Positions 2,197-54,477 of a stretch of DNA of 64,000 nucleotides are shown one piece after another. The translations under genes were made by a program, and so were the position numbers. Below the pieces are notes generated by a model. That model saw only the letters and a list, made by a program, of their open reading frames with translations. It ran no database searches and was not told where the DNA came from. The stretch comes from Iphione sp. A-MEVVRFRX5 (lineage: Eukaryota): assembly GCA_976226885.1 (NCBI GenBank), contig OZ320319.1, forward strand, positions 27,094,001 to 27,158,000, in the 5' to 3' direction. The stretch's first letter is position 1. Each line of letters begins with the position of its first letter.

Positions 2197-2200
2197 ATAT
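2197..2200. repeat. 4-bp target-site duplication ATAT (partner at 9843-9846)
   Basis: cagcATAT|TGTAGG at the left junction and AATTACA|ATATtg at the right junction. Confidence 0.9.
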
Positions 2201-2250
2201 TGTAGGGTATGGGAGGCGGTGCTGCTAAGCCTCCCATACAGGGTTGAGAT

Positions 2251-2878
2251 CGTTGGCAGTGCCACCAACCTTTTAGTATGGGAGTGTGCCTCCTGGGCCA
2301 CAGGATTGGTGGTGCCGCCAAGGTTTATGCACTGTGCTGTACTTGATGAACTCTGGGTGTGCTATTTATAGCCTGTAAGTAGGGCATGAGTGCTATTTAT
2401 AGCTGGTAGGCAGGGATCGCTGGCGGTGACGCCAACCTTTTAGTATAGGAGTGTGCCTCCTGGGCCACAGGGTTGGCGGTGTCGCCAAGGTTTATGCACT
2501 GTGCTGTACTTGATGAACTCTGGGTGTGCTATTTATAGCCTGTAAGTAGGGCATGAGTGCTATTTATAGCTGGTAGGCAGGGATCGCTGGCGGTGACGCC
2601 AACCTTTTAGTATAGGAGTGTGCCTCCTGGGCCACAGGGTTGGCGGTGTCGCCAAGGTTTATGCACTGTGCTGTACTTGATGAACTCTGGGTGTGCTATT
2701 TATAGCCTGTAAGTAGGGCATGAGTGCTATTTATAGCTGGTAGGCAGGGATCGCTGGCGGTGACGCCAACCTTTTAGTATAGGAGTGCGCCTCCTGGGCC
2801 ACAGGGTTGGCGGTGTCGCCAAGGTTTATGCACTGTGCTGTACTTGATGAACTCTGGGTGTGCTATTTATAGCCTGTA
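2251..2878 (+). repeat. 167-bp tandem array in U3 of the 5' LTR (about 3.8 units)
   Basis: CCAACCTTTTAGTAT recurs at 2265, 2432, 2599 and 2766 (period 167). Confidence 0.95.
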
Positions 2879-2959
2879 TGTAGGTCACATGTAGCAAAGG
2901 GGTTCCAAAAAAAATTACTGTGTTGCATGTTGGAGATGATCATGTGACTGACTGCTGCC

Positions 2960-2990
2960 TATATATAAGGGGCCCTGTGTGGCCAATAAA
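2960..2990 (+). promoter_or_regulatory. LTR TATA box (TATATATAA 2960-2968) and poly(A) signal (AATAAA 2985-2990); copies in the 3' LTR at +6600
   Basis: Canonical motifs directly downstream of the U3 tandem array in both LTRs. Confidence 0.7.
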
Positions 2991-3243
2991 CCAGTCTGCA
3001 CTTGGATTACGTTGTGGCTGTTGTCTCTTCAGGGAATGCTAGGAACACATACCCACTTGGATTTACCTTAGGGTTAGCCTATTGGAGTAGCGTATTGGAT
3101 TAACACATGAGGATTACTCAGCCAGGGAATTAACTACCATAGGAGGATTTACCAAGTGGAAATAACAACACACATACGACACTTGGGGATATTACTTTAT
3201 TCCAAGGAGTAACTCAAAGGAGATATAAATACGCAAATTACAC

Positions 3244-3261
3244 TGGTGTCAGAAGTGGGAT
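3244..3261 (+). promoter_or_regulatory. Primer-binding site complementary to tRNA-Leu 3' end
   Basis: TGGTGTCAGAAGTGGGAT begins 1 nt after the LTR. It is the reverse complement of ...ATCCCACTTCTGACACCA, the 3' end of metazoan tRNA-Leu(CAA) as I recall it. Confidence 0.9.
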
Positions 3262-3273
3262 TCCCCAGACAAG

Positions 3274-4125
3274 ATGGCTACAGCTTATGTCTCTGTGGAC
3301 GATGAAGTGCAGATTCGTGTCACCAGCCCGGCACCTGACACAGAAGAGGAGGAGCACTTTGAGATTGCTCCAGAAGAGCCGCTCAAGATCAACACTTTGA
3401 AGCCAGAGCGGTTTGACGGTAAGACTGTTGATTGGGACAGCTGGATCAGTCAGTTTGCGGAGTGGGCAACCGCTTGCAAGTGGGGGGAGGACACAAAATG
3501 CTCTGCATTGACCTTGTCCCTGACAGGGACAGCCCGCATGTATTATGGGGATCTCCCTGCCGAGGAAAAGAGGGATTATGCTAGCAGGGTGGCTGCCCTT
3601 GAGCGAAGATTTGGCAGAAGGAGGGATCGAGTTGTGGCAATGCAGAAACTATCAGGCATGAGACGTCAGAAAGACGAGGATGTGAGGGACTTGGCCGATC
3701 GGGTTAGGAGGCTGGTACGCACAGCATACCCCGACGTGACGGGGGAAACTAGGGAATTGGCAGCTGTTGCGGCATTCCAGAGGGCCCTAGCAGACTCCCT
3801 CCACTTGAAGTGCCTTGAAGCCAAGTGTACAACATTGGATAACGCTGTCCAGGTAGTGGAGACCCAGGAACGTTTTCGGGCAAAGGCAATTAACACCGTA
3901 CAGCAGGCTCCTATCCAGACCCCTATCGCCTCAACCCCAGCTGGGTGGAAAAAGGAGATGGAGGAACTCATAGCTCAGGAATTGCGCAACCTGAGAGAGG
4001 AAGCTAAGACACAAGAAGAAGGAAAGCCTCAGAGGCCCCGGTTCACTGGATGCTACCAGTGTGGACAACATGGCCACTTTAAGCGGGATTGTCCCCAACT
4101 ACCTACATCAGGAAACGCCAACTAG
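3274..4125 (+). CDS. gag: Retrotransposon Gag (283 aa), capsid-like region plus CCHC zinc knuckle
   Basis: ATG 12 nt after the PBS. Gypsy-type motif PERFDGKTVDWDSWISQF...W...K...L...LTGTA. CYQCGQHGHFKRDC at 4051-4092. Confidence 0.93.
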   Translation: MATAYVSVDDEVQIRVTSPAPDTEEEEHFEIAPEEPLKINTLKPERFDGKTVDWDSWISQFAEWATACKWGEDTKCSALTLSLTGTARMYYGDLPAEEKRDYASRVAALERRFGRRRDRVVAMQKLSGMRRQKDEDVRDLADRVRRLVRTAYPDVTGETRELAAVAAFQRALADSLHLKCLEAKCTTLDNAVQVVETQERFRAKAINTVQQAPIQTPIASTPAGWKKEMEELIAQELRNLREEAKTQEEGKPQRPRFTGCYQCGQHGHFKRDCPQLPTSGNAN

Positions 4126-4212
4126 CTGGCCCAGTAGGCCCGGGGGAGCATGGCTGATCCAGTCCCCCCGGGGTGCATAAGGGAGCAAGGCTGGGGGCCA
4201 TGCTTAGGTAAG

Positions 4213-5069
4213 CATAAGGGGTGGCAACTATATACTTCTGGTGGATACGGGGGTAGGAGTTTCCATTGTTTACCCTGGGGTAGTTCTTGGCCTTGAAGGT
4301 AAAAGGGGACAGACCTGGATTAATGGGGCGGGTGGACAGGTAATCCCCATGCTAGAAACAGAGGTCCTAGGGATAGAAAGTAGTAGAGAGACAGTTTTTC
4401 TCACCCTTTCCTGATAGCTCAGACTGGAGAAGAGGGTATCTTGGGGAATGATTTCTTAAATCATCATCAGGCAGTCATAGACCTGGCACAAGGGAGGGTT
4501 CGCTTTGATGGTGAGTCAGGGGCGCAGCAGCGTCCTGGGAAAGTAACCGCTCTACGTGGAGCCCATGACGTGTCCCTTTCCATGGGAGTGGGGCGGGGGC
4601 CACTGTCTTACTGACCAATCCTGAGGGTGCCTTGCCTCTAATAGAGGGGTTGGATGAGAAGTGGATGAAACAAGGGATCTTTGGGCTGTTAGCTCAGACA
4701 GTGGGGCAGCCTGACGTGGTACAATCCGAGATTTATTTGCTGGGCCCCCATCCCATTAAGCAGCCCCCATAGAGGGCCCTAACCGCCCCTGGGGTGGGAG
4801 TAACAGGGGCTAGTGGGGGAAATAAGGGTCTTGGGGGTGACCCAGGAGAGTGGGAGGTAGTCAGGCGGCTCGATGATGAGCGTTTGATGATACAGCGGAC
4901 GCAAAAGGCGAAGCTGAAGGTGGTTCATAGGAACCGGCTACGACGTTGCCAGGGAGACGATCTTCCTCGGTGGATTTTGACACTAAGGAAGAAGATGGTG
5001 GCGTCGCGGGAGAACGGAGAGGTCAAAACGAAGACTTCGGGCGTGGGGGGAACGGATCCCCCGGAGTAG
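4213..5069 (+). pseudogene. pol: Decayed, internally deleted pol: aspartic protease relic, first residues of RT, integrase C-terminal tail
   Basis: LLVDTGVGVSIV (DTG at 4244-4252), with stops at 4412-4417. GILGNDFL (4435-4458) lies in another frame. HPIKQPP*RAL (4749-4781) resembles the start of RT. KGL...WEVVRRLDD..MIQ....K.KVVHRNRLRRCQG...P.W resembles the GPY/F tail of Gypsy integrases. No YxDD, RNase H or DDE core is visible. Confidence 0.85.
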
Positions 5070-6094
5070 CCGGAGTCAGGAAGAATTGGGGGTATAAGCA
5101 CCCAGGTGGCACTCAAAAAGTTCATGGAAGGTGGTGGAACACCTGGAGCGTGTAGCGTTCAAAAGTTCCAGTAGGACATGACGGACGTCCTGAGGATCAT
5201 CAGTATCCAAAACGAGTCCGTGTTGGGGTAGACTCCCTGTAAGCATCCAAAAAGTTCTGGGAGGCAAAAACGAGGAGAGCCTGGAGCTGCCAGAAGCTTA
5301 GAATGCTCCTCGGAAGGAGAGAGTAGACATCCTGGGGGCCATGTGGGCCCTGAAAAGGTCTAGGAGGAGGGCGGACATCCTGGGACGCTTAAAAAGGTCT
5401 GGAGTGGGAGGATGAACATCCCAGAGTGCACAAAAGAGCTTATGGAATGCACAGGGCTATTGGAGAGGGCCCGGAGTTAGACGCGGAAAGCTCAAAACGA
5501 TCTCCAGAGGGGTCGATAGGTAGGCCCCTGAGAGGAGCAACCGAGAGGGCGACTAGGACGCGAACAGGCTGTTCCATGAAAAGTTTGATCCCCCCTTACC
5601 ACCAAGGGGTGGGAGAGAAACAAGACTTCACACCGTCGCCGCACGGAACGCTATTCAAACTGCTGGTCATCCCCGCTGGGGGAACACTTGGGCCAGGATG
5701 TAACCCATGGCTTCTGAAAGACAAGAGGCCCATCGGGGGCGTGGTGAGGAAGAGTAGCACTACACATGGATGACAACCCCAGGAGGGGGAGGGGTAGCTA
5801 TTGGCTGGCTGAATGACTGACTGAACCAAGCTGCCGTCCATTTCCTCTAGGAGAAGGCGAAGACCAAGATGCTGTCCATTTCCTCTGGGGGACGCCAGCT
5901 GCTCGGCTGCCAGAACAAGGTAGACAACAGTGAGATCCTCAGGGAGGAAGAGGCCATGCTGGGTTAGTGAGGTGAGGTAGGGAGGAAGAGCCATGATGGG
6001 TTCGACCTGTCTTCACCAACGGCGAGTCAACGACTGACGGCGGGCCACGCCCCCCCACTGACTTATATAGCATCACGACTGGGGAGGAAATGCG

Positions 6095-6935
6095 TGGCGG
6101 ACCCGCCGACGAACAAAAATTAAAGCGCAATGCCTGTCCCGACCCAGGAGAATGTTGGCGACCCCGCCACCGAAGAAATTCTACGACGCAATAAAAAGAA
6201 GGGGTGGCGACCCCGCCATCGAGGTAATTACGTCAGGAGTGGCGGCTCCGCCACTGACATTGAAGGGGAACGACACGTCGTGGGGATCGTCCACGACAGA
6301 GGTGTGGCGGCCCCGCCAACGATCCTTGCCAAAGAAACTAAGACGAACTGAGTGGCGACCCCGCCACTAAGAGAGGTTGCAAGGCAACTACGTCGCAAAA
6401 ATAACATTCAATTACCAGAGCGTTCATCGTGTTGAGCTTGGCGGAACCGCCAACAACAATGGTCAGACTGGTGGCGCCGCCACCGTTGGATACCGGAAGC
6501 GGGCAACCAAACCATCCGGTTTGCCTCGTTTTCAGATAGCGTGAATTGTGAACATGTGTAAGACCCGGAATGTCGGCCCCAAAGTGAGAGAAAATATAGT
6601 TTTTGGAACGAAATAACCAGGAAACACTAGGAGAGGGAGACAAGGAGGAACCAGGGATTCGCAGAGTGACGGTTGAGCCCGGGAATAGCGAAAACACTTC
6701 GCCAGCGCACGCCAAGACCCGATCGATAGCGGCACCGCCAGCATTGTACACTCTCTGGTAAGAAACCGATTTTGATAAGGGTAGTCGATCTTCCCCTAAA
6801 CTGGTAGCGGAACCACTAGCACCCCTAACACAGCAAGTATTACCCCTTGGGATTGGCGGCACCGCCGGCATCAGTCAAGAGGGGGCCCGCTACGTAGTAC
6901 GCATACCCGGGGAGGCATTGTTGGTGGTACCGCCG
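6095..6935. repeat. Cluster of about 12 spaced palindromes T(G/A)G(C/T)G-N4-C(G/A)C(C/T)(A/G) with unique spacers
   Basis: Copies start at 6095, 6156, 6205, 6240, 6305, 6353, 6439, 6469, 6727, 6805, 6854 and 6922. Confidence 0.85.
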
Positions 6936-6964
6936 ACATAGTGGATAGCAGCCCTGCCACAGAA

Positions 6965-8389
6965 ATGCCGAGGGAGCCGGTCGACCAACCAGAACGCCTG
7001 CCCCGAGTGGCAAAGGAAGGAAGGCCAGCTGGTACTGAACTCTGTGAACTGTGTACTGTGCCCCGCCCTTTCTTTCCGGGCGCGTCTATGAAGCGCCACA
7101 TAGATGACTACCACAAGGGCAAGAGGAGGAGGCATATGAGGTGTCTCTTCTGCCCCAGCATCCTGTCCCATGAGCAATCATGGATCGGACACATCAGGAA
7201 ATATCACGCATGGGTGGTGGAGATGGGGCTCACCGACAAGCCTTACCGTCGGCTCTTTGATGCTACGCCGACGGGGGAGGTGGTGGCCCCTGATGACGAG
7301 CTTACGGAAATAGTTATGGCGGCCCGGAAGAAGCGCCAAGCTGGGTGGGCATTGAGCAGGGAGGAAGCAGAGCACATGCTTGCCAACAGTACTCACCGTA
7401 CACCCCCACCTGTACCGATGCGGCGATGTGTGGAGGCACTGGCCCCGGTGGCTGCCGCCCTCCCGGGTGGGGGCCAACTGGACCGCCCCCAACTACCTGT
7501 CGTGGACCCAGCTGTTCTTCACGACATGCAGCACCAATGTGAGCCCCAACCTGGTCCATCTGGAGTGGGAGGGGACCCCCTCCTCAGCCAAGCAGCTGCA
7601 ACGCCAGGGGGTGGCCGGTCCCCAGGCGCATTGGTGCCAGTGACAGGGGCCCTCTCACCCGCCCGGAACCTTTTGTCTCCTTGGAGATCAGAAGATGACT
7701 TAGCCACAGGCGCCATGGAGGTGGGGCCACCAGAGAAGAGTACGGGACTGACTTGGTTGCCTGACGGACATCTGGCCCGTCTGGCCTGCCACCTCCTGAC
7801 TTCTGCCCAGGTTGAGCCTGCCCTGGGCCACCTACGGAACATTTTGGATGGGGTTGTTCACCCACATGTTCCAGTGATGCGGGAGGTTCCCCAACCGATG
7901 AAGATACGGCTTCCGCCTTGTCTCACATGGCCACCACAGTCCTGGAGGAAGATGTCCCCTTCCCAGCGTCTCATGGCTTGTACCGCCCTTGCCTGGGTGG
8001 TGCAGATGGCCGAAGGAGGAGAAAATGACAAGGCACTCCTGGGCCCCCTGCTCACACCTCTGCGTCGCCGTCCGGTTTTGCTGCTTCCGGGACTGGACAT
8101 CCCCAGCGAGAAGGAGTGGGGAAACCCAGACAACCTCCTCCGGTCCAATAATAAGGTGCTGGAAATGGCAGAGGGGTTCCTTAAGGAGCAACGAGGGCGT
8201 TCGCCCCCATTAAACTCCCGGTGGGCGGAGGAGACTCAGGCTATTCGGGATGAGTACCAGGCTCAACATCTGACCTTGGCAGACCTGTGCAACAACGCTG
8301 CACCCTCACAGTACCTCTTCCATCTAGACGACATATGGGGGGATGAGCTGGAGGAAGAGGGGCCAGATGAACAGGAGGCCGCGGAGTAA
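6965..8389 (+). CDS. Accessory ORF of the LTR element (474 aa from first ATG): two N-terminal C2H2 zinc fingers and an unknown C-terminal domain
   Basis: Long uninterrupted ORF; the track starts it at GTG 6941, the first ATG is 6965. Motifs CELC-x14-HIDDYH and CLFC-x12-HIRKYH, a Pro/Gly-rich linker and an acidic tail. No signal peptide or TM segment visible. Confidence 0.85.
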   Translation: MPREPVDQPERLPRVAKEGRPAGTELCELCTVPRPFFPGASMKRHIDDYHKGKRRRHMRCLFCPSILSHEQSWIGHIRKYHAWVVEMGLTDKPYRRLFDATPTGEVVAPDDELTEIVMAARKKRQAGWALSREEAEHMLANSTHRTPPPVPMRRCVEALAPVAAALPGGGQLDRPQLPVVDPAVLHDMQHQCEPQPGPSGVGGDPLLSQAAATPGGGRSPGALVPVTGALSPARNLLSPWRSEDDLATGAMEVGPPEKSTGLTWLPDGHLARLACHLLTSAQVEPALGHLRNILDGVVHPHVPVMREVPQPMKIRLPPCLTWPPQSWRKMSPSQRLMACTALAWVVQMAEGGENDKALLGPLLTPLRRRPVLLLPGLDIPSEKEWGNPDNLLRSNNKVLEMAEGFLKEQRGRSPPLNSRWAEETQAIRDEYQAQHLTLADLCNNAAPSQYLFHLDDIWGDELEEEGPDEQEAAE

Positions 8390-8954
8390 AGTCATTGAAC
8401 TACACTGTTGCTGAGGACAGTTGCAATATTAGGAACATTATACTGCTGAAGATGTTATGCGAGATTCTAGACCAAGGGACCAATTACATGTGTGAGGTAA
8501 GGAAGGCTCCTGATGTTGGAGCAGAGCCGGAAAGCACAAGCGTGTAGATTCAGGAAATTGCATTCACTGCTATTCGTTGTAATTAAAGAAAACACAAAGG
8601 GGGCCATACCCCACAAAAAGAGTTACTTAAGATTGTGCATGGATGTTCCAGGAAGAAGAGATAAGTAAGGGGGATCCTACCCCCACAAAAAGAAAAAGTT
8701 TTGTTTGGTGGTTGCCATATGTACCCCATATTGGGGCGAGCCGGGGACGTTACTCAAAAAAAAGGGGGAGACCCTCCCTCCAAAAAGAGAAGTAGAGGAG
8801 TGTTTTTTTTTGTTTAGGGACTGTTGTACTGTTGTTACCTGAAAGAAGATATTTACCCCAGAGAGCAAGCCTGACTGCCAGCTAGAAGTGGTAAGTAGCT
8901 ACCTTACTCAAATATTACTCGCTTCCAAAGTTCCCCCCCTGGACATGTGGATTT

Positions 8955-8967
8955 AAAGGGGGGAGAG
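8955..8967 (+). promoter_or_regulatory. Polypurine tract
   Basis: AAAGGGGGGAGAG directly abuts the TG of the 3' LTR. Confidence 0.92.
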
Positions 8968-9842
8968 TGTAGGGTATGGGAGGCGGTGCTGCTAAGCCTC
9001 CCATACAGGGTTGAGATCGTTGGCGGTGCCACCAACCTTTTAGTATGGGAGTGTGCCTCCTGGGCCACAGGATTGGTGGTGCCGCCAAGGTTTATGCACT
9101 GTGCTGTACTTGATGAACTCTGGGTGTGCTATTTACAGCCTGTAAGTAGGGCATGAGTGCTATTTATAGCTGGTAGGCAGGGATCGCTGGCGGTGACGCC
9201 AACCTTTTAGTATAGGAGTGTGCCTCCTGGGCCACAGGGTTGGCGGTGTCGCCAAGGTTTATGCACTGTGCTGTACTTGATGAACTCTGGGTGTGCTATT
9301 TATAGCCTGTAAGTAGGGCATGAGTGCTATTTATAGCTGGTAGGCAGGGATCGCTGGCGGTGACGCCAACCTTTTAGTATAGGAGTGCGCCTCCTGGGCC
9401 ACAGGGTTGGCGGTGTCGCCAAGGTTTATGCACTGTGCTGTACTTGATGAACTCTGGGTGTGCTATTTATAGCCTGTATGTAGGTCACATGTAGCAAAGG
9501 GGTTCCAAAAAAAATTACTGTGTTGCATGTTGGAGATGATCATGTGACTGACTGCTGCCTATATATAAGGGGCCCTGTGTGGCCAATAAACCAGTCTGCA
9601 CTTGGATTACGTTGTGGCTGTTGTCTCTTCAGGGAATGCTAGGAACACATACCCACTTGGATTTACCTTAGGGTTAGCCTATTGGAGTAGCGTATTGGAT
9701 TAACACATGAGGATTACTCAGCCAGGGAATTAACTACCATAGGAGGATTTACCAAGTGGAAATAACAACACACATACGACACTTGGGGATATTACTTTAT
9801 TCCAAGGAGTAACTCAAAGGAGATATAAATACGCAAATTACA
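8968..9842 (+). repeat. 3' LTR (875 bp), with about 2.8 units of the 167-bp repeat (9018-9478)
   Basis: Repeat anchor at 9032, 9199 and 9366. 9121-9842 matches 2521-3242 apart from one base. Confidence 0.96.
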
Positions 9843-9863
9843 ATATTGATATATTTTGCCTAA

Positions 9864-12355: not shown

Positions 12356-12870
12356 CAGAGGAACCTCGCTTACCGGAGCCCCAACAATCAGATTTTCACA
12401 TTAACTGCAACAAATTTAAATTACCAAGTGTTTTTTCTGTATAAAATGTACTATTTAACTGGATATTTGTTTTTCATAACCGGAGTGTATTTAACTACAT
12501 TCTTATATGCTTTACTATAGGAAAAAGACATACTAACCGGAATAGGAGCAAGATGATTACATAAGAGTGACAAGCAGACCAGACCCTCCTAAAAGAAGAG
12601 ACAACATAGCTCAGGGCGACTAGCATAGGTTCAAAGTCAAATACAGATGTGCGAGATGATTGCATAAGAGCAACAAGCAGGCCAGACCCTCCTAAAGCAA
12701 GACACAACATAGCACAGAGAACAAAGAAATGATACATTCTCCCTGAAATTTGCTGTTTTTTGTCACTTTCTCCTTGAAATTTACTGTTTTTTGGCACTTT
12801 CTCCATGGAATTTGCCTCAATCTCCATGAATTGGGCCATTTTTCCCTGCCAGGAGATGCATGAGTCGCTT
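12356..12870. mobile_element. Tc1/mariner(pogo)-like non-autonomous repeat; related copy at about 26565-27000; right end uncertain
   Basis: TA|CAGAGGAACCTCGCTTACCGGAG vs CAGTTGAACCTCGCCTACCGGAG. Both copies share a downstream block (ccagaccctcctaaaagaagagacaacatagc vs ccaggacctcctaaaagtagaaacaacacagc). Confidence 0.5.
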
Positions 12871-38539: not shown

Positions 38540-39252
38540 CTACCAGGCCCTTATGCCTTGATGCACCTGCGACTGGACGTAGCCTGGGTGCTGCTGCATG
38601 GGAGGCAGCGAGTTCATATTGGTGCTATAGGCGGGCGTGGAAGCCGAGTATGCAGCAAAGGGGTTCACATTGTAGGGACCGTTGTAGGTGTTGGCCATGC
38701 AAGGTTTGCCGTCCCTCACTAACACGGGCACGGCCACCCGGCGAGGGGGCTGCAGCTGGGACAGCTCCAGCGTTTTGTCCTGGCGCTGCCGCTTCATCTT
38801 GTAGCGCCTATTCTGGAACCAGATCTTCACCTGAGTCGATGTGAGTTTCAGCATGGTAGCCAGCTGCTCACGCTCGGGCGCCGACAGGTAGCGCTGCTGC
38901 TTGAAACGCCGCTCCAGTTCATACACCTGCGCCTGCGAGAATAGTACGCGCGGCTTCCGCTTGGTGCGCTGCCGCAGCAGGTGGCATTCCGTCTCGCTAT
39001 CATCTCCCCTACTGCCCCCCTTGTTACTGCTACTGCCGTGGTTGTTGTTGCTGCCACTGTTATTACTGCTGGTGCTACTGTTGTTACTGTTACTACTGCT
39101 GCCCCCGGTGGTCGAGGTATGCTTGTTGGACCCACTAGATAGGTTGTTGTGACCGGTGCTGTTGGAGAGCGATGTCGCCGAAGGAGAACTGTGGTGGTTG
39201 GTGTAACCCGACGTACTTCCAGGCACTTTGTCTAGTTCCGCACAGGAAGGTT
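38540..39252 (-). CDS. NK4: NK4/tinman (Nkx2-3/2-5/2-6 class) homeobox gene, coding exon 2: homeodomain, NK2-SD, GIRAW
   Basis: Homeodomain [60 protein letters not shown] (38962-38783) with NK2-class Tyr54. NK2-specific domain [17 protein letters not shown] and C-terminal GIRAW*. Acceptor ttgttctttgtcttcAG at 39254-39253, phase 1. Confidence 0.97.
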
Positions 39253-41149
39253 CTGAAGACAAAGAACAAAAACTTGATATAATAACATATTTCATTATTG
39301 ACAATAGAGACCCAGGAAAAAGCGATTTAATTACATGATTTTATATGTGCGTGTGCATGTGCATGCGTGTGCGTGTGTGTGAACGCGCGCGTGCCTTTGT
39401 GTGCAAGACGTGTAGGAGGAAACCTATCCCGCACAAACAGGAGGAGGCGAAACACAGAATTCTTGACGCCTCGTACTAAAAATTTGTGCAGCTGCAATTC
39501 GACAAATGCCAAGTGACTAATCGTACAATATATCGCGTAATAATCCATGCTCGTATTTTATCTGTCACATGTATGTATTCAGATTGGTGGGCTTGATAGA
39601 CTCCGCATGTCTTCCGTCTATATGGTTTTTGCATATTCCCACGGTACATTCTGAGTGATACATTTTGCATATATATCACAACACTCTTTTTTATACCTTG
39701 TTACATATATATACACACTAAATGAGCATACCACATATGCTCTATTCAGTGTGAAGGAGTAACGCTCCTGCGCACCTAAAAAAGACATACATCTGTTCGT
39801 ACACATACTGTGATGTGCATGACAGGTACAAGAAAAGAAACATTATGGTAAAGATATGGGAGAAGCACAGGTTTTACGAGTGGGTGATATTGCAATATTT
39901 TCTACAAACGTACAAGAAGATTATTTAATCGACGCATGGATAAAGCACACATGCACATGTCCTGATTATGTATACCCTCCGTTCTGCCCTAAACTGTCCA
40001 CATTTCAGACATGCCTGCCTAGGAAAAGGTAATTTTGCCATTTTGTGACCAAATGTGAATGGATTTTACTTTTTTCAGTGAAAATTGCATGAGTTTTGCC
40101 ATTTACGGCCTAATTTTCATTCAATTTCTCATTTTCATGGGCTGAATTAACATGAATTTTGCCGTTTATCGGCCCATCCTTGTCTTTTGTGTGATATTCA
40201 CACTACCACACCTCGTTTGAAGTAGTTTTGCTTCTCTGCCACAGCTCTAGTTTTTTGACACGTTGTCCGCTGGACGGTGTCATGCGAAAATAGATGTCCT
40301 GCATGAATATAGGGTACATTTCTATGGAATTCACATCTGTTCTGAGCTCATGCAACTGTCCACTATTGGGACGCATCCATACTACACGGAGGGACGTCCT
40401 ACTGTACACGTATATATGTATATGTGTGCACTTCTATCTCTAGCTATCCGTTCCTTCAAAAGCAAAGGTGGACAATTGCATAACAGCACGATGCGTACAA
40501 TAAATGTATGTACACATGAAAGCATTCTACGGCCATGTATACACATATATCTATAGGCATATGTTCCACTGAGCATAAATGCAATGTATATACTTTGGAC
40601 TATCTATACAAATGAAAACAGTTCAAATCACAGTTTCTTACGATATCTAATGCGACAGTATCTTCAGGAACATGCGTATGATTCTAATCTTTAGGACCTT
40701 GGTTTCGCATATGTACTATTCCGTGTGTTTTTTGTGTGCTTGACCCAAATATATTCCTATTCAATGACCGATCCTTCTACCTGTGGATATTTTTCTTTCA
40801 ATGTCTATTTTTCCGATAGTTAATTGTCAGTTGATAAACAAACATTTTTTGTGTTAAGAACTATGAGGAAAATTGTGTTTACACATCCATGTTATTTCCC
40901 ATGTTTCTTTTGGTTAAAACCTGTGATGATGAATGAGAAGAAGACGTCAGGAAAAAAGTTAAAGGTATACGAAAATTACAGAACTGTCTATGTCCACAAG
41001 AATAGGACTAACTTGTCATAAAATACTCATCTTATTATGAGGTAACAATGTTATTGATTGCTTTATCATACGACACAGACGATGGATATCGTCTTGATAA
41101 CGGAGCTACCGTCAAACCCTAGCCTCTCTCCCTATACGTGGTAGTTTTT

Positions 41150-41830
41150 TTCCTGGCCGGCGGACGCAGGCTCCGGAGCCCGGCCACATCAGCTGGGAAC
41201 TCGCCGTACCCGGAGCCGGGCCCGCGGAGGGAGGACGGCCGTGTCAGGCGGCCGTAGCGCTTAGCGGCGGGCGCTGTTTGCCCAACTATTAGCGGCTGTT
41301 TGCCGAGTCCTGCTTCAATTTACCTGTTATGAATAGGCAAAGACAAGGAGCCGCTGAGAGTGAGTTAATCCGATATGGGTGATAAACTGCCCCCATCCAC
41401 CCCTCTCGGCCCTCAGCTCGAACCTAGGGCCATCCCCAGGCCCTCCTGCCCGCCAGCCGCACGGGGCGGCCTCCCAGCCGGAGCAAACAGATCAGTGTCA
41501 ATGGCAATAGAGAAATAATCCATAATAATCTTTTGTTTTGGGCGGCAACTCAAGCACGTGCAAATTAGCCACCGCTTTATCGCGCATAATTTGACGGCTA
41601 TCAGGTTCTCGTCCCAATCGATTACGCCGCTCGTCGCCAGAGGGCCCGCGTCAATGGCGGAGGGCGGACTAATGGGCGATAATAGGGCGGGACCGGAAGG
41701 CAGCGCGTCTCGCGCTCGTCCGCCGCTGAAAAGCCGCGTTTTTCGGCCGTCTCGGCAGCCCTCTTGTGTTGACTCGCTGACAACACACATCAACGGCGCG
41801 AAACATCATCCCCCCCGCCTTGTTTTGGAC
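41150..41830. promoter_or_regulatory. Intronic GC-rich island, candidate NK4 enhancer
   Basis: TGTTTGC at 41275 and 41297, TTAATCC 41365, TGATAA 41380, CACGTG 41555, TTTATC 41576, CGATAA 41677, in a CpG-dense block. Confidence 0.5.
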
Positions 41831-43774
41831 CAATAGATGTTGGTAAGCGCATGCGCACAGGGTAGTGGGAAGATGGCGGAATTCTGGAAGAAGGAATTTA
41901 AACTGAAATCAAAGGAGCGATGATTCTCTGTTGACCCGAGTGTGAATTGATATACGTTCATTGTGAGTACTGTACTTTCATGCTGAGGGTTGATTGGAAT
42001 AGAGAAGCTTCACTGTCGCTCGTTTACACAAATAGGCCCTGATTATTGACTGCAGACACTTTTCCCCTGCGCAAACGTTCATTTTTGTCTGTCACTTGTA
42101 TCTATTTTAAATCTGCAATTTGTCTAACCTTCCACATTCCCCTTGTCTACGTGTATTTCCATTTTTGCCAACCCCTTTTCCTGCCTCAATTTTCTCTTCC
42201 CATTTGTATAACTCGTGTACACGTTTAATCCCGCTGTGGACGCGTCATGTGCAAGTACATGTGCTCTTTCACCCTTCCCTAAACAGTGAGGTTCTCGTCT
42301 TCTGTTTATAATTCTAATTAATTCTCCTCGCCCATATTTTTCATTTATCATTTTTTCATGTCGTCTGCCTAAATTTCCTGGGCGGCGATACTTTTCAGAA
42401 GCATTCTCGTGTGTCGCCTGTGCTATATACCTTCCCGATGCTTTCTCCTATCCTGTCCAAGCCCCTATTACAACATAACTACCCATCTCCATGACCGCAC
42501 CTGTGCACGCGGGTCTTCCATGAAAGCAGTTCATGGCTCTTTGATTACACGGAATGAAGAGCTGCCGATGTAGATTAGATTCTTGACACCAACCAACGAC
42601 TAGAGAGGGAAATACATCTGAACCAAGTACAAGCGGTATTTCTTCATAATTTGCTTCTGTTACTGATTGTGGGACAAACCTGCCAGAAAAGCAGGTTGAC
42701 AATAGTACTAACCTAAAAGAAACAATACATTTAGTTGGACGCGCAATGCTTGGAGCTTGGACTGATTTGTTTCGATGACAGCTTTCATATCTCATTTCCC
42801 TAAATAGCAGCAACTTACACTTCTATTACATACGTATACTTAAACAGGGATCCGAAGTCCCGATGAACCAACAACATCAATTTTCATTAGAAAAAGTAAG
42901 AAAACATTCGTGCTAGTCAGACAGGTAGTGAATGTGACATAGATTTGAAGCGGTGTTATTTTCAAACTGTCTCCCCTACGTGGACGGGGTCCGTATCACT
43001 TGTCTACACCAACCAAGTTACCCCCTGGATGTAAGTTTTGCTAAGAGTGAGTGACCTTCCTGGTATCTACCAACAATTTGGGAGGAAAACGGGTAAGGCT
43101 GGCTTTCCATGCATATGGAAATTACCTCCAGTGTCCAGACTGCATAGTGCAGAAAATAATGGTCTCATGCACAGAGTTTAACAAAGGGTCACCCATGTAT
43201 CAGTGTGTCCATGTCCATGCTCTGTGTCCGGAGGTGCAAAAGGAACCTGGGCAGTAAATTTCTCCAGATTCCAGACTACGGACACCCACACAGACAGAGA
43301 GATACAGAGAGACAGAGAGAGAGTATGTATGTGTGTATGTATTGTATGTATATATATGTATGGAGGGTGAGGCATATGTGTGGAAATTGTGCAGTTTTTC
43401 ATGGAGGTTGGGGCATATCGGTGGAAATTGTGCAGTTTTTAGGCAAATAATATGCAAATTATAGATTACTTCACAACATCTATCATGTGATAGACAGTGT
43501 CTACCCAGCTGAAAAAGCCCTATTTTCAGTACACATGAAAGCACCTATTCGGAGAGTCTGGAAAATTGGCCGAATTTCTGGATGGGCTATGCTGTGCAGA
43601 AAATTTTCTGGATGCATGGAAAGCTGGCTTAACTGTGCTTGTGGGATGCCCGAAAAGAATCTGAAGTGCATGTACCATAATTTTATATTTAATCTACCCC
43701 TGCCACCTCTCTCCCTCTGTGCTCGTATCATCCCCCTGAGTACATTATAGCATGCCCTCTGACAAAATGTGATC

Positions 43775-46800: not shown

Positions 46801-48067
46801 ATGTATGATAGATGTTTTTATACTTTTTGCAGTGAAATTCTATGATAGGTGTATGACAGATGTATGAAAAATGATATTTTCATACTTTTTCCAGTGACAT
46901 TCCCCAGTTTTATATACTTTTTCCAGTAAAATTCACCAGTTTTCATTCTTTTTCCAGTGATATTAACCAGTTTTTGTACGTTTACCAGGAGCATTGACTA
47001 GCTATAAGTAATAACACAGCCAAAATGCATTTTCAGTTGACACACGAATCCATGAGCCTGAGTTAAGGTAAAACGTATGTAAAATGTGTGGTAACGCACA
47101 TGGACCGCAAACGCAAGTGAACAGACCTCAGCGCATGTAAGGAATCCGGCCCTTATACATTTAGGGAAACGTTAATTAATGTATTTTGTATACAAGACTC
47201 CATCGCTTAGCAAGATAAATCTAAACATACATGTAATACGAAAATAAGTGTACAACTGTTCTCAGAAAACATAAAGATCATAACGAAAACTTAACCATTT
47301 CGATAGTATCCACCTCAAGAACCCCCCAGAAAATAACCCGAAAAGTCAAAGTTCCTGACACTTCATGTATGGAGAACCAAACAGGTGGTTGCTGTTTAAA
47401 ATTTGAGAGCGCAGATGACAATCCAAACATTTTCGATCAGGCCCGCTTCTGCGGATTTTTATTACCGAGTCACCGTTATACATGCACTTAAATCATTAGA
47501 TCCATAATTGATTGCACTTTAAGTGGTGGTACCAGTCTACGCAAACACAAGACCCTGGGGTCAATTTTTAGTCGCAGACCATGGCCAAACCAGATACATG
47601 TACCTCCCCAGCGCAAACGTCCCAGACATATAGGTTCATACAACTATAATCTCTCGGGTAATGTATTAATATGTGGATGTTATACTACACCAAAAGGCTT
47701 ACCGAACACTGGCAAACACACGCATGTCTGGGAAAATACCAATACAATACGAGAACGATTCATCAAAACCTTTTGGAAGACAAAACAAATTTTTCGTGGG
47801 TCTTTTATTAACGTCTTGCACAAGTGATTTATTGCTATTGTTCAGTCAAAGTTAGAGTCTAATTATTTATGCATATATAGACACTCTTATATGATTAGCA
47901 TAATACATATAGATGGGACAATATGGGTTGGATGTTTATCAAATTCTATAATTTGTATAGGGATGTATACAAAAATCCCGGGTGAATACGTTTTATCTGC
48001 AGAATTCTTACCCGAAAATTAACTCTAGCGTATGATTCAGAATATTTTGGAACTCAAACTAAATTTA

Positions 48068-51982: not shown

Positions 51983-52056
<74 letters not shown>
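51983..52056. repeat. (TC)37 microsatellite
   Basis: Direct reading. Confidence 0.97.
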
Positions 52057-52060
<4 letters not shown>

Positions 52061-53666
52061 TATAAACCATTTCTTTCCCGCGCTTGTAAACACAACGTCC
52101 TTCACCAAGTGCGATCCGAGGTGGCTTTGATCCCTTTAGGGCGGCCATCCTTGATAGGATCATCTCTTGATCCCGCCAAAACGGGGTGACCTCAAAGTAA
52201 GTGCACTTAAGAGGATTTCTGTTGGGACAGTTACAGTTGCCATAGTGATGTGTGGAGGAGGATCCCCCTTGACCCCCTACCCCCTGGAGGTATATAGGCC
52301 CAGCAGGAGGGGGGTAAAATACCGTAGAATGTACAAGGTACATGTACAACCGCCTGGCGGTAGGCTGGCGTTGCCGGCCCAGGTGGTCCCTCTCCTCCCG
52401 GAGGCCCCGTCGGGCTCTCGTGGGTGCAAACACCCGCTCCGACATATATACAAGTACATATATATATATCCATGTATATATTCCCTGGAATATACGTAGG
52501 TTCACAAGCACTGGAAACACATAGGAGGGAAAGGATTCAACTACAGAGAGGTTATCAAATACATATACATGTATTCAAAAGAGCGACAGCATTTTCTCGC
52601 TTTGATCTCAATTGTTATGGTGAAATTTATGCTGATCCAAGAATTTTGACTCGTTTAAGTTTGCTTGCTACAGTGGTTCTTCGATGTTCGTCAAAGAACG
52701 TAGTTATTGCACAAAACGGAGAACTTCTCCGCTTAAATAGACTATTGAAACCCTCATAGAGTAAGTAATCTCACCAATCATTATATGGCTCTATGTGTCA
52801 CGTAAACTAGAGCTAATATACGTGTACATTGTATATGCAAACTAACGTTTAACCAAGACATAAATTTATAGGTACTTTTTGTCTAAAAGTAAATGTGTGG
52901 ACCGCCTTTTTTGATCCAAAGGAGTGAATTGTAATCGAGCAAATACAATGTGCGATAACCTGATCTAACTGGGATGTCAAATAGCTCACCTTATGATATC
53001 GTTACTCTAATACTATACAGACGAAAAAGCCAAATGCGCCGAGAGGTCTTCGTTATAAGCAGTGGTTTGATATCTTATATCCCACAGGGATATCGAAATG
53101 GGAGGAGGCTCTGCTGGTAAATCACACTGCATCAACAAATAGCTCTGCCAACGAATGCTAGCCTTTCCACGAAATGTAGATATTACAGATCAAATGAACA
53201 TACAATGTATTTTCATTCTGTGTGCAGCATTTGGAGACCGAACAAATAATTAAACGAAGAGTGGAAGGAGCAGAAAAGGTGAAAAAGGTATTATTCATAC
53301 AAGTATATGAAGGAAGGAAAAGAGGAGACAGACAGACAGGGACACGGAGAGAAGGATGGGGCACAAGGGAACAGAGAAATGAATGAAGTGTATCAGCGGT
53401 TCATTTTGGCGAGATTTTTAGAACAGATTTTTTCCTGTATTTCTTAGGAGGGTTCACACTGCGTCTCATTGCCCTTTGACATGCGAAAATGTCCCATCAA
53501 AATCACCATGTAAAAGAATTGATCGAACTCTAGGTTTTACTTGTCAATTTTTCATCATTAGAATTAATCCAAAAACGAAATGAATATCTCCCCCTCCCCT
53601 TAGACACTAGTAAATGTGCTGCTTTGTATTGTGTTGTAGGATTAGGTAATAAGGAAACAGTCTTAC

Positions 53667-54477
53667 TTTTGTCTAGGTTGCTGAGGTCTTCCCTCGTCGG
53701 TGCATGGCCTGCTTGTGTAGGTGCAGGCGGTGCTAAGGGGCTGCTGTTGGCGAGTCCGGCGGGAGGAGAGGGAGGACCGCCCGGTAGAGAGAGCCCGAAC
53801 TCGGCGCCTAGCCGGGCCAGGGTGCTGGCCGTCAAGTCGCTGTACGGGCTGTAGGCAGGTGGGGGCGGCACGGTTCCGGGGCCACCTCCCCCGGCGCTTC
53901 CACCCCCGGTCGTGGCTCCCGGCCCGCCGGTCGTTGCCCCAGGTCCGCCCGGTCCGGAGGTGCCAGGGTGGTGCATGAGGGACCCCGTACTACCATACTC
54001 ACAGGAGGACACGGCTGAACTGACACTGGAGATGCTCTCCTGGATCTGTTGGAGCATTGAAGATGACTGACTGATCCCTGGCAGTCCGGGAACCATGGAG
54101 GACGAGTCTGCAGCCATTGTCATGGAGTGGTGGTGGTGGTGAGGTGCTCCTGTGAGGTGGTGCGTGCCCAGGTGAGGATGGTGGTGGTGGTGATGCCCAT
54201 GGTGGTGGTGGTGATGGTAGCCCGACCCTCCACCGCCGGCGTGCGCGCCGCCTCCTGCTGCCGCCGCCGTCGCGCCCGCCGCAGCCGCCGCCGCTGCAGC
54301 CGCCGCCGTCGCTCCCTGGTAGCTCATTGCTCCCTGCTGGAAATCCAAAGCACAGTTGGCCTGGTCAGTAAGGTTGAGGATGTTCTTGACGGAGAAAGGG
54401 GTTGGCAGCGCGCCGCCGCCGCTTACAGAAGCCAGCAACGACGCCGAGTCTGTCTCCATACCCCCGAGCACATACAT
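53667..54477 (-). CDS. NK4: NK4/tinman homeobox gene, coding exon 1: TN/eh1 domain, poly-Ala, poly-His and Gly/Pro-rich tracts
   Basis: TN motif TPFSVKNILNL (54402-54370). Donor GACAAAA|GTAAGA at 53667/53666. 811 nt gives phase 1, matching exon 2, for a 507-aa protein. The start could instead be the second Met (54459). Confidence 0.92.

What the first reader, a model, noticed from the sequence alone, without database searches (positions are those of the whole stretch)
2201..9842. Young non-autonomous retroelement that keeps gag and an accessory ORF but has discarded pol
Seen: the LTRs differ by only two visible substitutions in 875 bp plus one repeat unit, and the TSD, PBS and PPT are perfect. 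Yet the pol relic has several stops, a frameshift and heavily diverged motifs, while gag (283 aa) and the zinc-finger ORF are fully open. Inference: pol decay long predates this insertion, so the lineage has replicated using a helper's enzymes while selection kept its own Gag and accessory protein. This resembles a satellite or parasite of an autonomous Gypsy family.
Basis: partly seen in the sequence, partly recalled or inferred. Interest (0 to 1): 0.8.

Follow-up and report, generated by a model that had tools for sequence, protein, structure and literature searches.

The report
Gag-keeping, pol-deleted Gypsy retrotransposon copy
This is a very recently inserted Gypsy-type jumping gene in an invertebrate genome that still has its capsid gene and an extra zinc-finger gene but has lost its copying enzymes, so it must have been moved by a relative's enzymes; elements of this kind are already known.

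Summary
Window 2201-9842 is a complete LTR retrotransposon. Its LTRs are 1042 and 875 bp and differ by 2 substitutions plus one exact 167-bp repeat unit. It has a 4-bp TSD (ATAT), a 20-nt tRNA-Leu(CAA) PBS and a PPT. gag (283 aa, CCHC knuckle) and a 474-482-codon ORF with two C2H2-like fingers are open.

Pol is mostly deleted rather than diverged. What remains is a protease and RT N-terminal relic with 2 stops, 2 frameshifts and an 83-codon gap, joined to about 90 codons of integrase tail.

LTR divergence predicts about 0.6 substitutions in the relic since insertion, so the lesions predate the insertion. The copy was therefore mobilised in trans at least once.

Gag is 83% identical to an autonomous-looking relative (metagenome contigs L001-L003) although synonymous sites are saturated. 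That relative shares the PBS, the LTR end and a 36-nt R block.

ORF3 is an orphan. It is preceded by a 395-nt ATG-free leader and an array of TGGCG-N4-CGCCA palindromes that recur only in the LTR repeats.

Copy number, shared lesions and a helper in the same genome could not be tested. Verdict: a new member of a known kind (TR-GAG-like non-autonomous LTR element), of moderate interest.

The parts
2197..2200 (+). Left target-site duplication, ATAT
   Evidence: Identical 4 nt at 9843-9846 directly outside the LTR ends
2201..3242 (+). 5' LTR, 1042 bp, TGTA...TACA termini. U3 holds 3.8 tandem units of 167 bp (2248-2884). TATA at 2960, AATAAA at 2985.
2970..3005 (+). 36-nt block (downstream of the TATA box, poly(A) signal, presumed R) identical in the relatives L001-L003
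   Evidence: Alignment A2. gag synonymous sites between the same two families are saturated.
3244..3263 (+). Primer-binding site complementary to the 3' end of tRNA-Leu(CAA), 20 nt, one nucleotide after the LTR
   Evidence: Sequence. Matches the tRNA-Leu(CAA) probe and gene sequences in PMC7997516 and PMC10359600. The first 18 nt are conserved in L001-L003, where position 19 differs.
3274..4125 (+). gag ORF, 283 aa, with a CCHC zinc knuckle at aa 260-273 (4051-4092)
   Evidence: 83% aa identity to P0001. pN 0.113 against pS 0.82.
4193..4775 (+). Pol relic: protease (DTG, GILGNDF) and the first ~35 codons of RT. It spans three reading frames and carries 2 stops (4205, 4770), 2 frameshifts and an 83-codon gap.
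   Evidence: tblastn with the intact pol fragment of L001. L001 PR matches Pfam RVP and gag-asp_proteas.
4773..5069 (+). Integrase C-terminal tail, the only remnant of IN. It is in the same frame as the RT N-terminus, directly after the large deletion.
   Evidence: Weak Pfam Integrase_p58_C match, E 0.001, below the curated cut-off, at 4851-4943. The motif reading is from my own knowledge of Gypsy integrases.
5070..6940 (+). Non-coding spacer with no codon-position signal. It contains short direct repeats and an array of TGGCG-N4-CGCCA palindromes at 6095-6482.
6156..6482 (.). Seven exact TGGYGN4CRCCA palindromes. The other 13 in the 64-kb window all lie in the LTR 167-bp units.
   Evidence: 20 matches against 0.29 expected by chance, none outside the element
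6571..6964 (+). ATG-free leader before the ORF3 start. TATA-like AAATATAG at 6593; acceptor-like site ending at 6535.
   Evidence: 395-nt gap, 5.7 ATGs expected. It is the third-longest ATG-free gap in the window. Splice-like signals. Use of these signals is untested.
6965..8389 (+). ORF3, 474 aa from the first ATG (frame open from 6800). Two C2H2-like fingers (7043-7114, 7142-7207), basic clusters, Pro-rich middle, acidic C-terminus, no TM segment.
   Evidence: Only a generic C2H2 similarity among 1.84 billion representatives. No Pfam or PDB match.
8955..8967 (+). Polypurine tract AAAGGGGGGAGAG abutting the 3' LTR
8968..9842 (+). 3' LTR, 875 bp, with 2.8 units of 167 bp
9843..9846 (+). Right target-site duplication, ATAT

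Best explanation
This is an internally deleted, non-autonomous Ty3/Gypsy-type LTR retrotransposon in a lophotrochozoan genome, inserted very recently.

Shown: all cis signals are intact. These are the TATA box, AATAAA and R in the LTR, the tRNA-Leu(CAA) PBS, the PPT, the TG..CA ends and a 4-bp TSD. It has an open gag with a CCHC knuckle. It has no RT, RNase H or integrase core and only a broken protease. Its pol lesions are too many to be younger than the insertion.

Inferred: its RNA is transcribed from the 5' LTR. It is packaged by its own Gag, a helper's Gag, or both. It is then reverse-transcribed and integrated by PR/RT/IN supplied in trans by an autonomous relative that uses the same PBS, R and LTR ends.

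Inferred, weaker: ORF3 is expressed from a subgenomic RNA, made either from an internal promoter near 6593 or by splicing. The AUG-free leader fits this. ORF3 would encode a nuclear nucleic-acid-binding accessory protein that the lineage has kept.
For: - LTR anatomy and near-identity.
- PBS identity.
- gag domain.
- Map of the relic against an intact relative.
- No RT, RNase H or IN remnant in any stop-free piece of 4773-6938 apart from the IN tail.
- Lesions against age: 0.64 substitutions expected in the relic since insertion, P(>=4) = 0.004. At the relic's lesion density, gag plus ORF3 would carry about 16 lesions, P(0) = 8e-8.
- Gag pN 0.113 against relic pN 0.334 at equal, saturated pS.
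- ORF3 has codon-position GC (0.70/0.49/0.63) like gag, while the spacer is flat. No Markov simulation of 2000 reached 482 codons.
- ATG-free 395-nt leader.
- The element-specific palindrome is shared by U3 and the region upstream of ORF3.
- A related family has the same PBS, LTR end and R.
Against: - Only one copy could be examined. No collection that I could scan holds the host genome. Shared lesions, copy number and a resident helper are therefore untested.
- With the upper 95% bound on the LTR rate, P(>=4 events) rises to 0.20. That figure does not require the events to be disabling.
- The large deletion alone could have arisen in the last replication cycle.
- ORF3 has no homologues, so selection on it rests only on the contrast with the relic. 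If ORF3 was acquired recently, that contrast says nothing.
- Both AlphaFold models were uninformative.
Confidence: 0.7

Rival explanations
1. This is an ordinary dead copy of an autonomous family. It inserted as an intact or nearly intact element and then acquired private lesions in place, or its LTRs look young only because of gene conversion or assembly collapse.
For: Only one copy was seen. The two LTRs differ in repeat-unit number, which shows some post-insertion or replication-associated rearrangement. With the upper bound of the LTR rate, four events in the relic are not impossible (P = 0.20).
Against: Two stops, two frameshifts and two deletions lie within about 600 bp. In contrast, 2271 bp of gag plus ORF3 carry no lesion (P = 8e-8 at equal density). 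Only about 4% of substitutions create stops. The TSD and all cis signals are perfect. The LTRs are not identical, which argues against simple assembly collapse.
Confidence: 0.08
2. This is a transducing chimera. The 3.3-kb segment with ORF3 is a host C2H2 gene, or other foreign DNA, captured when pol was deleted. On this view ORF3 is cargo and not an element function kept by selection.
For: ORF3 is an orphan whose only similarity is to generic host-type C2H2 fingers. Its GC3 is within the range of the host exons in the window. Capture of extra ORFs by LTR elements is documented (PMC5408684).
Against: The region upstream of ORF3 carries the same palindromic motif as the LTR U3 repeats, and that motif occurs nowhere else in 64 kb. 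The ATG-free leader suggests an expression arrangement fitted to the element. No nested terminal repeats bound the segment. The IN tail lies upstream of it, as expected if ORF3 sat downstream of pol in the parent.
Confidence: 0.17
3. This is a one-step recombinant. An old, decayed copy's transcript was co-packaged with an active element's RNA, and template switching produced this mosaic in a single cycle. No self-sustaining non-autonomous lineage would then exist.
For: The RT N-terminus and the IN tail are joined in frame, as expected for a template-switch deletion. There is no evidence of further copies.
Against: This still requires trans-mobilisation of a pol-defective RNA, so it differs from the main explanation only in lineage depth. 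Gag is far better conserved than the adjacent relic, which is unexpected if both came from the same decayed parent.
Confidence: 0.05

Closest known systems
TR-GAG elements of plants (terminal-repeat retrotransposons with GAG domain; PMC4350172)
   Same: Non-autonomous LTR retrotransposons that keep LTRs, PBS, PPT and an open gag but no pol. They are presumed to be mobilised by autonomous partners.
   Different: TR-GAGs are shorter than 4 kb, are found in plants and carry a single ORF. This element is 7.6 kb, is in a lophotrochozoan animal, retains a visible PR/RT/IN relic and carries a second long ORF plus a 1.9-kb motif-rich spacer.
LARD/TRIM, and deletion derivatives such as mouse IAP I-delta-1 and ETn/MusD (from my own knowledge, not checked here)
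   Same: Internally deleted or non-coding LTR elements that transpose using a relative's proteins. They can be the most active members of a family.
   Different: LARD, TRIM and ETn encode nothing. IAP I-delta-1 keeps a gag-pol fusion and part of pol. Here gag is complete and separate, pol enzymes are entirely lacking, and an extra ORF is kept.
Accessory third ORFs of Ty3/Gypsy elements: Cer1 CERV (PMC10309623), bdelloid rotifer ORF3s (PMC5408684), errantivirus env
   Same: A lineage-specific ORF lies downstream of pol. CERV likewise has no homologues outside its host group and is made from a subgenomic (spliced) mRNA.
   Different: There is no sequence similarity to any of them. ORF3 has no TM segment, so it is not Env-like. 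It has C2H2-like fingers. Its expression and function are untested.
Arrays of factor-binding sites inside retroelements: Su(Hw) sites of Drosophila gypsy, and the foamy-virus Tas response elements in the LTR and internal promoter (from my own knowledge)
   Same: A short motif is repeated many times within the element. As in the foamy-virus layout, it lies both in U3 and just upstream of the accessory gene.
   Different: No binding protein is known here. The motif (TGGCG-N4-CGCCA) is different. The resemblance is one of layout only.

Membership tests
LTR retrotransposon (structural definition) | Two direct LTRs with TG..CA ends flanked by a short target-site duplication | tested here: met
   LTRs at 2201-3242 and 8968-9842, termini TGTA...TACA, TSD ATAT
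LTR retrotransposon (structural definition) | tRNA primer-binding site next to the 5' LTR and a polypurine tract next to the 3' LTR | tested here: met
   20-nt match to the tRNA-Leu(CAA) 3' end. PPT at 8955-8967. The host's own tRNA was not available.
Ty3/Gypsy (Metaviridae) | Pol domain order PR-RT-RH-IN | tested here: inconclusive
   The relic order is PR, RT N-terminus, IN C-terminal tail. This is compatible with Gypsy, BEL or retroviruses and not with Copia. The RT, RNase H and IN cores are absent, so the order cannot be fully read.
Ty3/Gypsy (Metaviridae) | RT phylogeny places the element inside Gypsy | not testable with these tools
   The window has no RT. The relative L001 has only about 70 aa of RT. 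Its PR matches RVP and gag-asp_proteas rather than the BEL/Pao peptidase. The RT N-terminal motif looks Gypsy-like from my own knowledge.
Ty3/Gypsy (Metaviridae) | Gag with a CCHC nucleocapsid knuckle | tested here: met
   Pfam zf-CCHC at E 4e-6, above the cut-off. PDB retroviral NC matches.
Non-autonomous LTR element (TR-GAG-like) | Lacks functional PR, RT, RNase H and IN while the cis signals are intact | tested here: met
Non-autonomous LTR element (TR-GAG-like) | Open gag under constraint | tested here: met
   283-aa ORF. pN 0.113 against pS 0.82 versus L001. Relic pN 0.334. The constraint cannot be dated to the non-autonomous phase alone.
Non-autonomous LTR element (TR-GAG-like) | Multiple copies sharing the same deletion, i.e. 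a propagating lineage | not testable with these tools
   The host genome is absent from every searchable collection.
Non-autonomous LTR element (TR-GAG-like) | An autonomous partner with matching PBS and LTR ends in the same genome | tested here: inconclusive
   L001-L003 share the PBS, the LTR end AATTACA and the 36-nt R block, and have an intact PR and RT start. However, they are 72% identical in DNA, lack the palindrome and come from metagenome samples of unknown host.
Errantivirus-like (env-bearing Gypsy) | The third ORF encodes a membrane glycoprotein with a TM anchor | tested here: not met
   Maximum 19-residue Kyte-Doolittle mean is 0.86, so there is no TM segment. No Pfam hit.

The most novel reading that the evidence does not exclude
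ORF3 may be an element-encoded regulator. It has two zinc fingers, basic clusters and an acidic tail. It could bind the TGGCG-N4-CGCCA palindromes, as DNA sites or as RNA hairpins, that the element carries both in its U3 repeats and just upstream of ORF3. That would make a two-promoter, self-activating circuit like foamy-virus Tas, or an RNA-export or packaging device like Cer1 CERV. A pol-less parasite would have kept this circuit, together with Gag, to out-compete its helper.
Probability: 0.15. Interest if true: 0.7.

Novelty: new member of a known kind. Interest (0 to 1): 0.4.

Why it matters
Non-autonomous LTR elements that keep gag are well described in plants but little described in invertebrate animals. 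A fresh insertion whose pol was already dead gives direct single-locus evidence of trans-mobilisation. It also shows which parts a parasite of a retrotransposon retains: the cis signals, Gag and possibly a regulator. If ORF3 and its palindrome array prove to be a protein and target pair, it would be a simple model for accessory-gene function in Metaviridae. Otherwise it is a routine repeat annotation.

Tried and rejected
- Searches for further copies or relatives all came back empty. I tried gag profile scans of metagenome, viral and prokaryote-genome collections, an ORF3 scan of viral contigs, and exact R-block and LTR-end/PBS patterns.
- The cluster look-up of the partial pol products of L001-L003 found nothing.
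- ORF3 has no homologue in the 5.8-billion-protein index. The exhaustive representative search gave one generic C2H2 hit. Pfam, PHROGs and PDB gave nothing.
- The AlphaFold models of ORF3 (pLDDT 38) and Gag (pLDDT 42) were too poor for fold searches, so none was run.
- An empty-site comparison with the orthologous locus of a related species (L004) was abandoned, because only the homeobox exon and one 94-nt block align.
- RNA folding of the palindrome array and of one LTR unit gave only modest z-scores (-2.8 and -1.5). An RNA-structure role is neither supported nor excluded.
- Troyka was rejected: it has CG..CG ends and a 3-bp TSD.
- Env was rejected: ORF3 has no TM segment.
- The NFI-site idea was rejected because the spacing is N6 between TGGC and GCCA, not N5 (from my own knowledge).
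- A literature search for the metagenome sample identifiers found nothing useful.
- The window is not human. Its NK4 homeobox exon is closest to lophotrochozoan genes. The two NK4 exons were not joined, and only exon 2 was searched, by reference.


Full report
**1. What is in the sequence**

Window 2201-9842 is a structurally complete LTR retrotransposon of 7642 bp.

- The 5' LTR (2201-3242, 1042 bp) and the 3' LTR (8968-9842, 875 bp) have TGTA...TACA ends.
- The U3 part consists of tandem 167-bp units, 3.8 units in the 5' LTR and 2.8 in the 3' LTR.
- After removing one unit, the LTRs differ at exactly two positions.
- The extra unit is a perfect duplicate of its neighbour.
- The element is flanked by ATAT on both sides.
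- One nucleotide after the 5' LTR lies TGGTGTCAGAAGTGGGATTC. This is identical over 20 nt to the reverse complement of the 3' end of tRNA-Leu(CAA), as printed in PMC7997516 and PMC10359600. Those are mammalian sequences. No tRNA-Leu gene lies in the window.
- The purine run AAAGGGGGGAGAG abuts the 3' LTR.
- The LTR carries a TATA box at 2960 and AATAAA at 2985.
- No other copy or pol-like sequence lies in the 64-kb window.

**2. Coding content**

gag (3274-4125) is an open 283-codon ORF with a CCHC knuckle. Pfam zf-CCHC scores E 4e-6, and there are PDB retroviral nucleocapsid matches.

I mapped the region after gag with the intact pol fragment of a relative, L001 (see section 4).

- Residues 6-71 align in one frame (4193-4390) and contain a TAG at 4205.
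- Residues 71-138 align in a second frame (4390-4593).
- Residues 145-168 align in a third frame (4620-4688).
- Residues 169-251 are missing.
- Residues 252-286, the first RT residues, align at 4671-4775 and contain a TAG at 4770.
- The protease motifs (VDTGVGVS, GILGNDF) are still readable.
- Right after the RT N-terminus, in the same frame, comes a 98-codon stop-free stretch. Its residues 27-57 give a weak match to the Ty3-type integrase C-terminal domain, at E 0.001 and below Pfam's cut-off.
- No other stop-free piece of 45 residues or more between 4773 and 6938 matches any Pfam family.

Pol is therefore not 'heavily diverged'. Its RT core, RNase H and integrase core are deleted, and the protease remnant carries two stops, two frameshifts and an 83-codon gap.

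**3. Timing of the pol lesions**

LTR divergence is 2/875, or about 0.0011 per site per copy. Over the 557 aligned bp of the relic this predicts 0.64 substitutions of any kind since insertion, so P(>=4 events) = 0.004. With the upper 95% bound of the LTR rate it is 0.20. Neither figure yet requires the events to be disabling.

Only about 4% of substitutions in these ORFs create stops. At the relic's density of point lesions, gag plus ORF3 (2271 bp) should carry about 16 lesions. They carry none, P = 8e-8.

This internal contrast argues against an old element whose LTRs were homogenised by gene conversion. It also shows that pol was already dead when this copy was made. It follows that reverse transcription and integration, which left a clean 4-bp TSD, were performed by enzymes supplied in trans. 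This step is an inference, but a strong one.

Whether the defect has been carried through many cycles, as a lineage, cannot be decided from one copy.

**4. A relative**

The gag search of the 5.8-billion-protein index returned a single protein, P0001, at 81-83% identity. It is encoded on three about 99% identical contigs from three ENA metagenome assemblies, L001-L003.

- In these contigs gag is followed by an open pol whose protease matches RVP, gag-asp_proteas and Asp_protease_2, and which continues into RT.
- The contigs share several features with the window element: the TATA region, a 36-nt identical block covering AATAAA and the presumed R (window 2970-3005), the LTR end AATTACA, the one-nucleotide spacer, the first 18 nt of the PBS and the gag start.
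- They are only 72% identical in DNA.
- They have a different U3 and lack the palindromic motif.
- Between the two gag genes, synonymous sites are saturated (pS 0.82) while pN is 0.113. In the pol relic pS is the same (0.815) but pN is 0.334. The difference in non-synonymous change has Fisher p = 1e-18.

Because gag is normally the least conserved retroelement gene (my own knowledge), this inversion indicates constraint on Gag and relaxation on the relic. The relative shows what an autonomous cousin looks like. It is not shown to be the helper, and its host is unknown.

**5. ORF3 and its surroundings**

The frame is open from 6800 to 8389. The first ATG is at 6965, giving 474 aa.

- Codon-position GC (0.70/0.49/0.63) resembles gag (0.59/0.46/0.56), whereas the 1.9-kb spacer is flat.
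- None of 2000 first-order Markov simulations of the region's own composition reached 482 open codons.
- The protein has two C2H2-like fingers (aa 27-50 and 60-81) and basic clusters (KRRR, RKKR).
- It has 11% proline, a net charge of -11 in the last 30 residues, and no TM segment.
- It has no homologue, with two minor exceptions: one generic multi-finger protein at E 2.7e-5 aligned to the finger pair only, and chance-level CTCF finger matches.

Two features tie ORF3 to the element. First, the 395 nt before its ATG contain no ATG, against 5.7 expected. This is the longest such gap in the element and the third-longest in the window. A TATA-like AAATATAG lies at 6593 and an acceptor-like site ends at 6535. 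Second, the palindrome TGGYG-N4-CRCCA occurs 20 times in the window against 0.29 expected. All 20 are inside the element: 13 in the LTR 167-bp units and 7 at 6156-6482 upstream of ORF3.

RNA folding of these regions is only modestly better than shuffles. Function and expression of ORF3 remain untested. The regulator idea is given as the novel case.

**6. Host and context**

The window carries an NK4/Nkx2-5-type homeobox gene on the minus strand. Its homeodomain exon is at 38540-39304. The closest named relatives are from Lingula and molluscs. The host is therefore a lophotrochozoan and not human.

The orthologous locus of a related species (L004) aligns only in the exon and in one 94-nt block, so no empty-site test was possible.

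**7. Comparison with what is known**

[quoted passage not shown] It differs in host, size, the visible pol relic and the extra ORF.

Extra ORFs downstream of pol are known in Gypsy elements, for example Cer1 CERV (PMC10309623) and the rotifer ORF3s (PMC5408684). None is similar in sequence. Troyka and env-bearing errantiviruses are excluded.

I file it as a new member of a known kind.

**8. Limits**

Copy number, shared lesions, a resident helper, insertion polymorphism and ORF3 expression could not be tested, because the host genome is in none of the searchable collections. Both structure predictions were uninformative.

The lesions are described only by position.

Noticed in passing
window 38540-39304 (-) and 53530-54477 (-): NK4/Nkx2-5-type homeobox gene. 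One exon holds the homeodomain and NK2-SD. An upstream His/Ala-rich ORF carries a TN-like FSVKNILNL motif. Closest named relatives are Lingula and gastropods, which places the host in Lophotrochozoa. The exons were not joined.
   Followed up: partly
window 41483-41576; L004:3475-3562: A 94-nt non-coding block is 85% identical to the orthologous NK4 locus of a related species, while the surrounding intergenic DNA does not align. It is a candidate conserved regulatory element upstream of the homeodomain exon.
   Followed up: no
window 2970-3005; L001-L003: A 36-nt stretch (downstream of the TATA box, AATAAA, presumed R) is 100% identical between two retroelement families whose gag synonymous sites are saturated. 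This implies very strong constraint on this cis region.
   Followed up: partly
window 8596-8790: Three PPT-like A/G runs, each followed by a C-run (for example AAAGGGGGCCATACCCC), lie upstream of the true PPT between ORF3 and the 3' LTR. Their meaning is unknown.
   Followed up: no
window 52355-52445 (+): ARAGORN calls a 91-nt tRNA-Arg(CCT) next to a (TC)37 microsatellite (51983-52056), inside the NK4 intron region. It could be an intron-bearing tRNA gene or a tRNA-derived repeat.
   Followed up: no
window 12737-12815, 43360-43440, 46877-46988: Short tandem arrays with periods of 31 and 41 nt. They are possibly parts of other dispersed repeats.
   Followed up: no
window 5825-5892 and 5330-5420: Short direct repeats inside the element's non-coding spacer (30-nt pair ACCAAG.TGC.GTCCATTTCCTCT.GG.GA; repeated GGACATCCTGGG...AAAAGGTCT). 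They suggest the spacer grew by local duplication.
   Followed up: no
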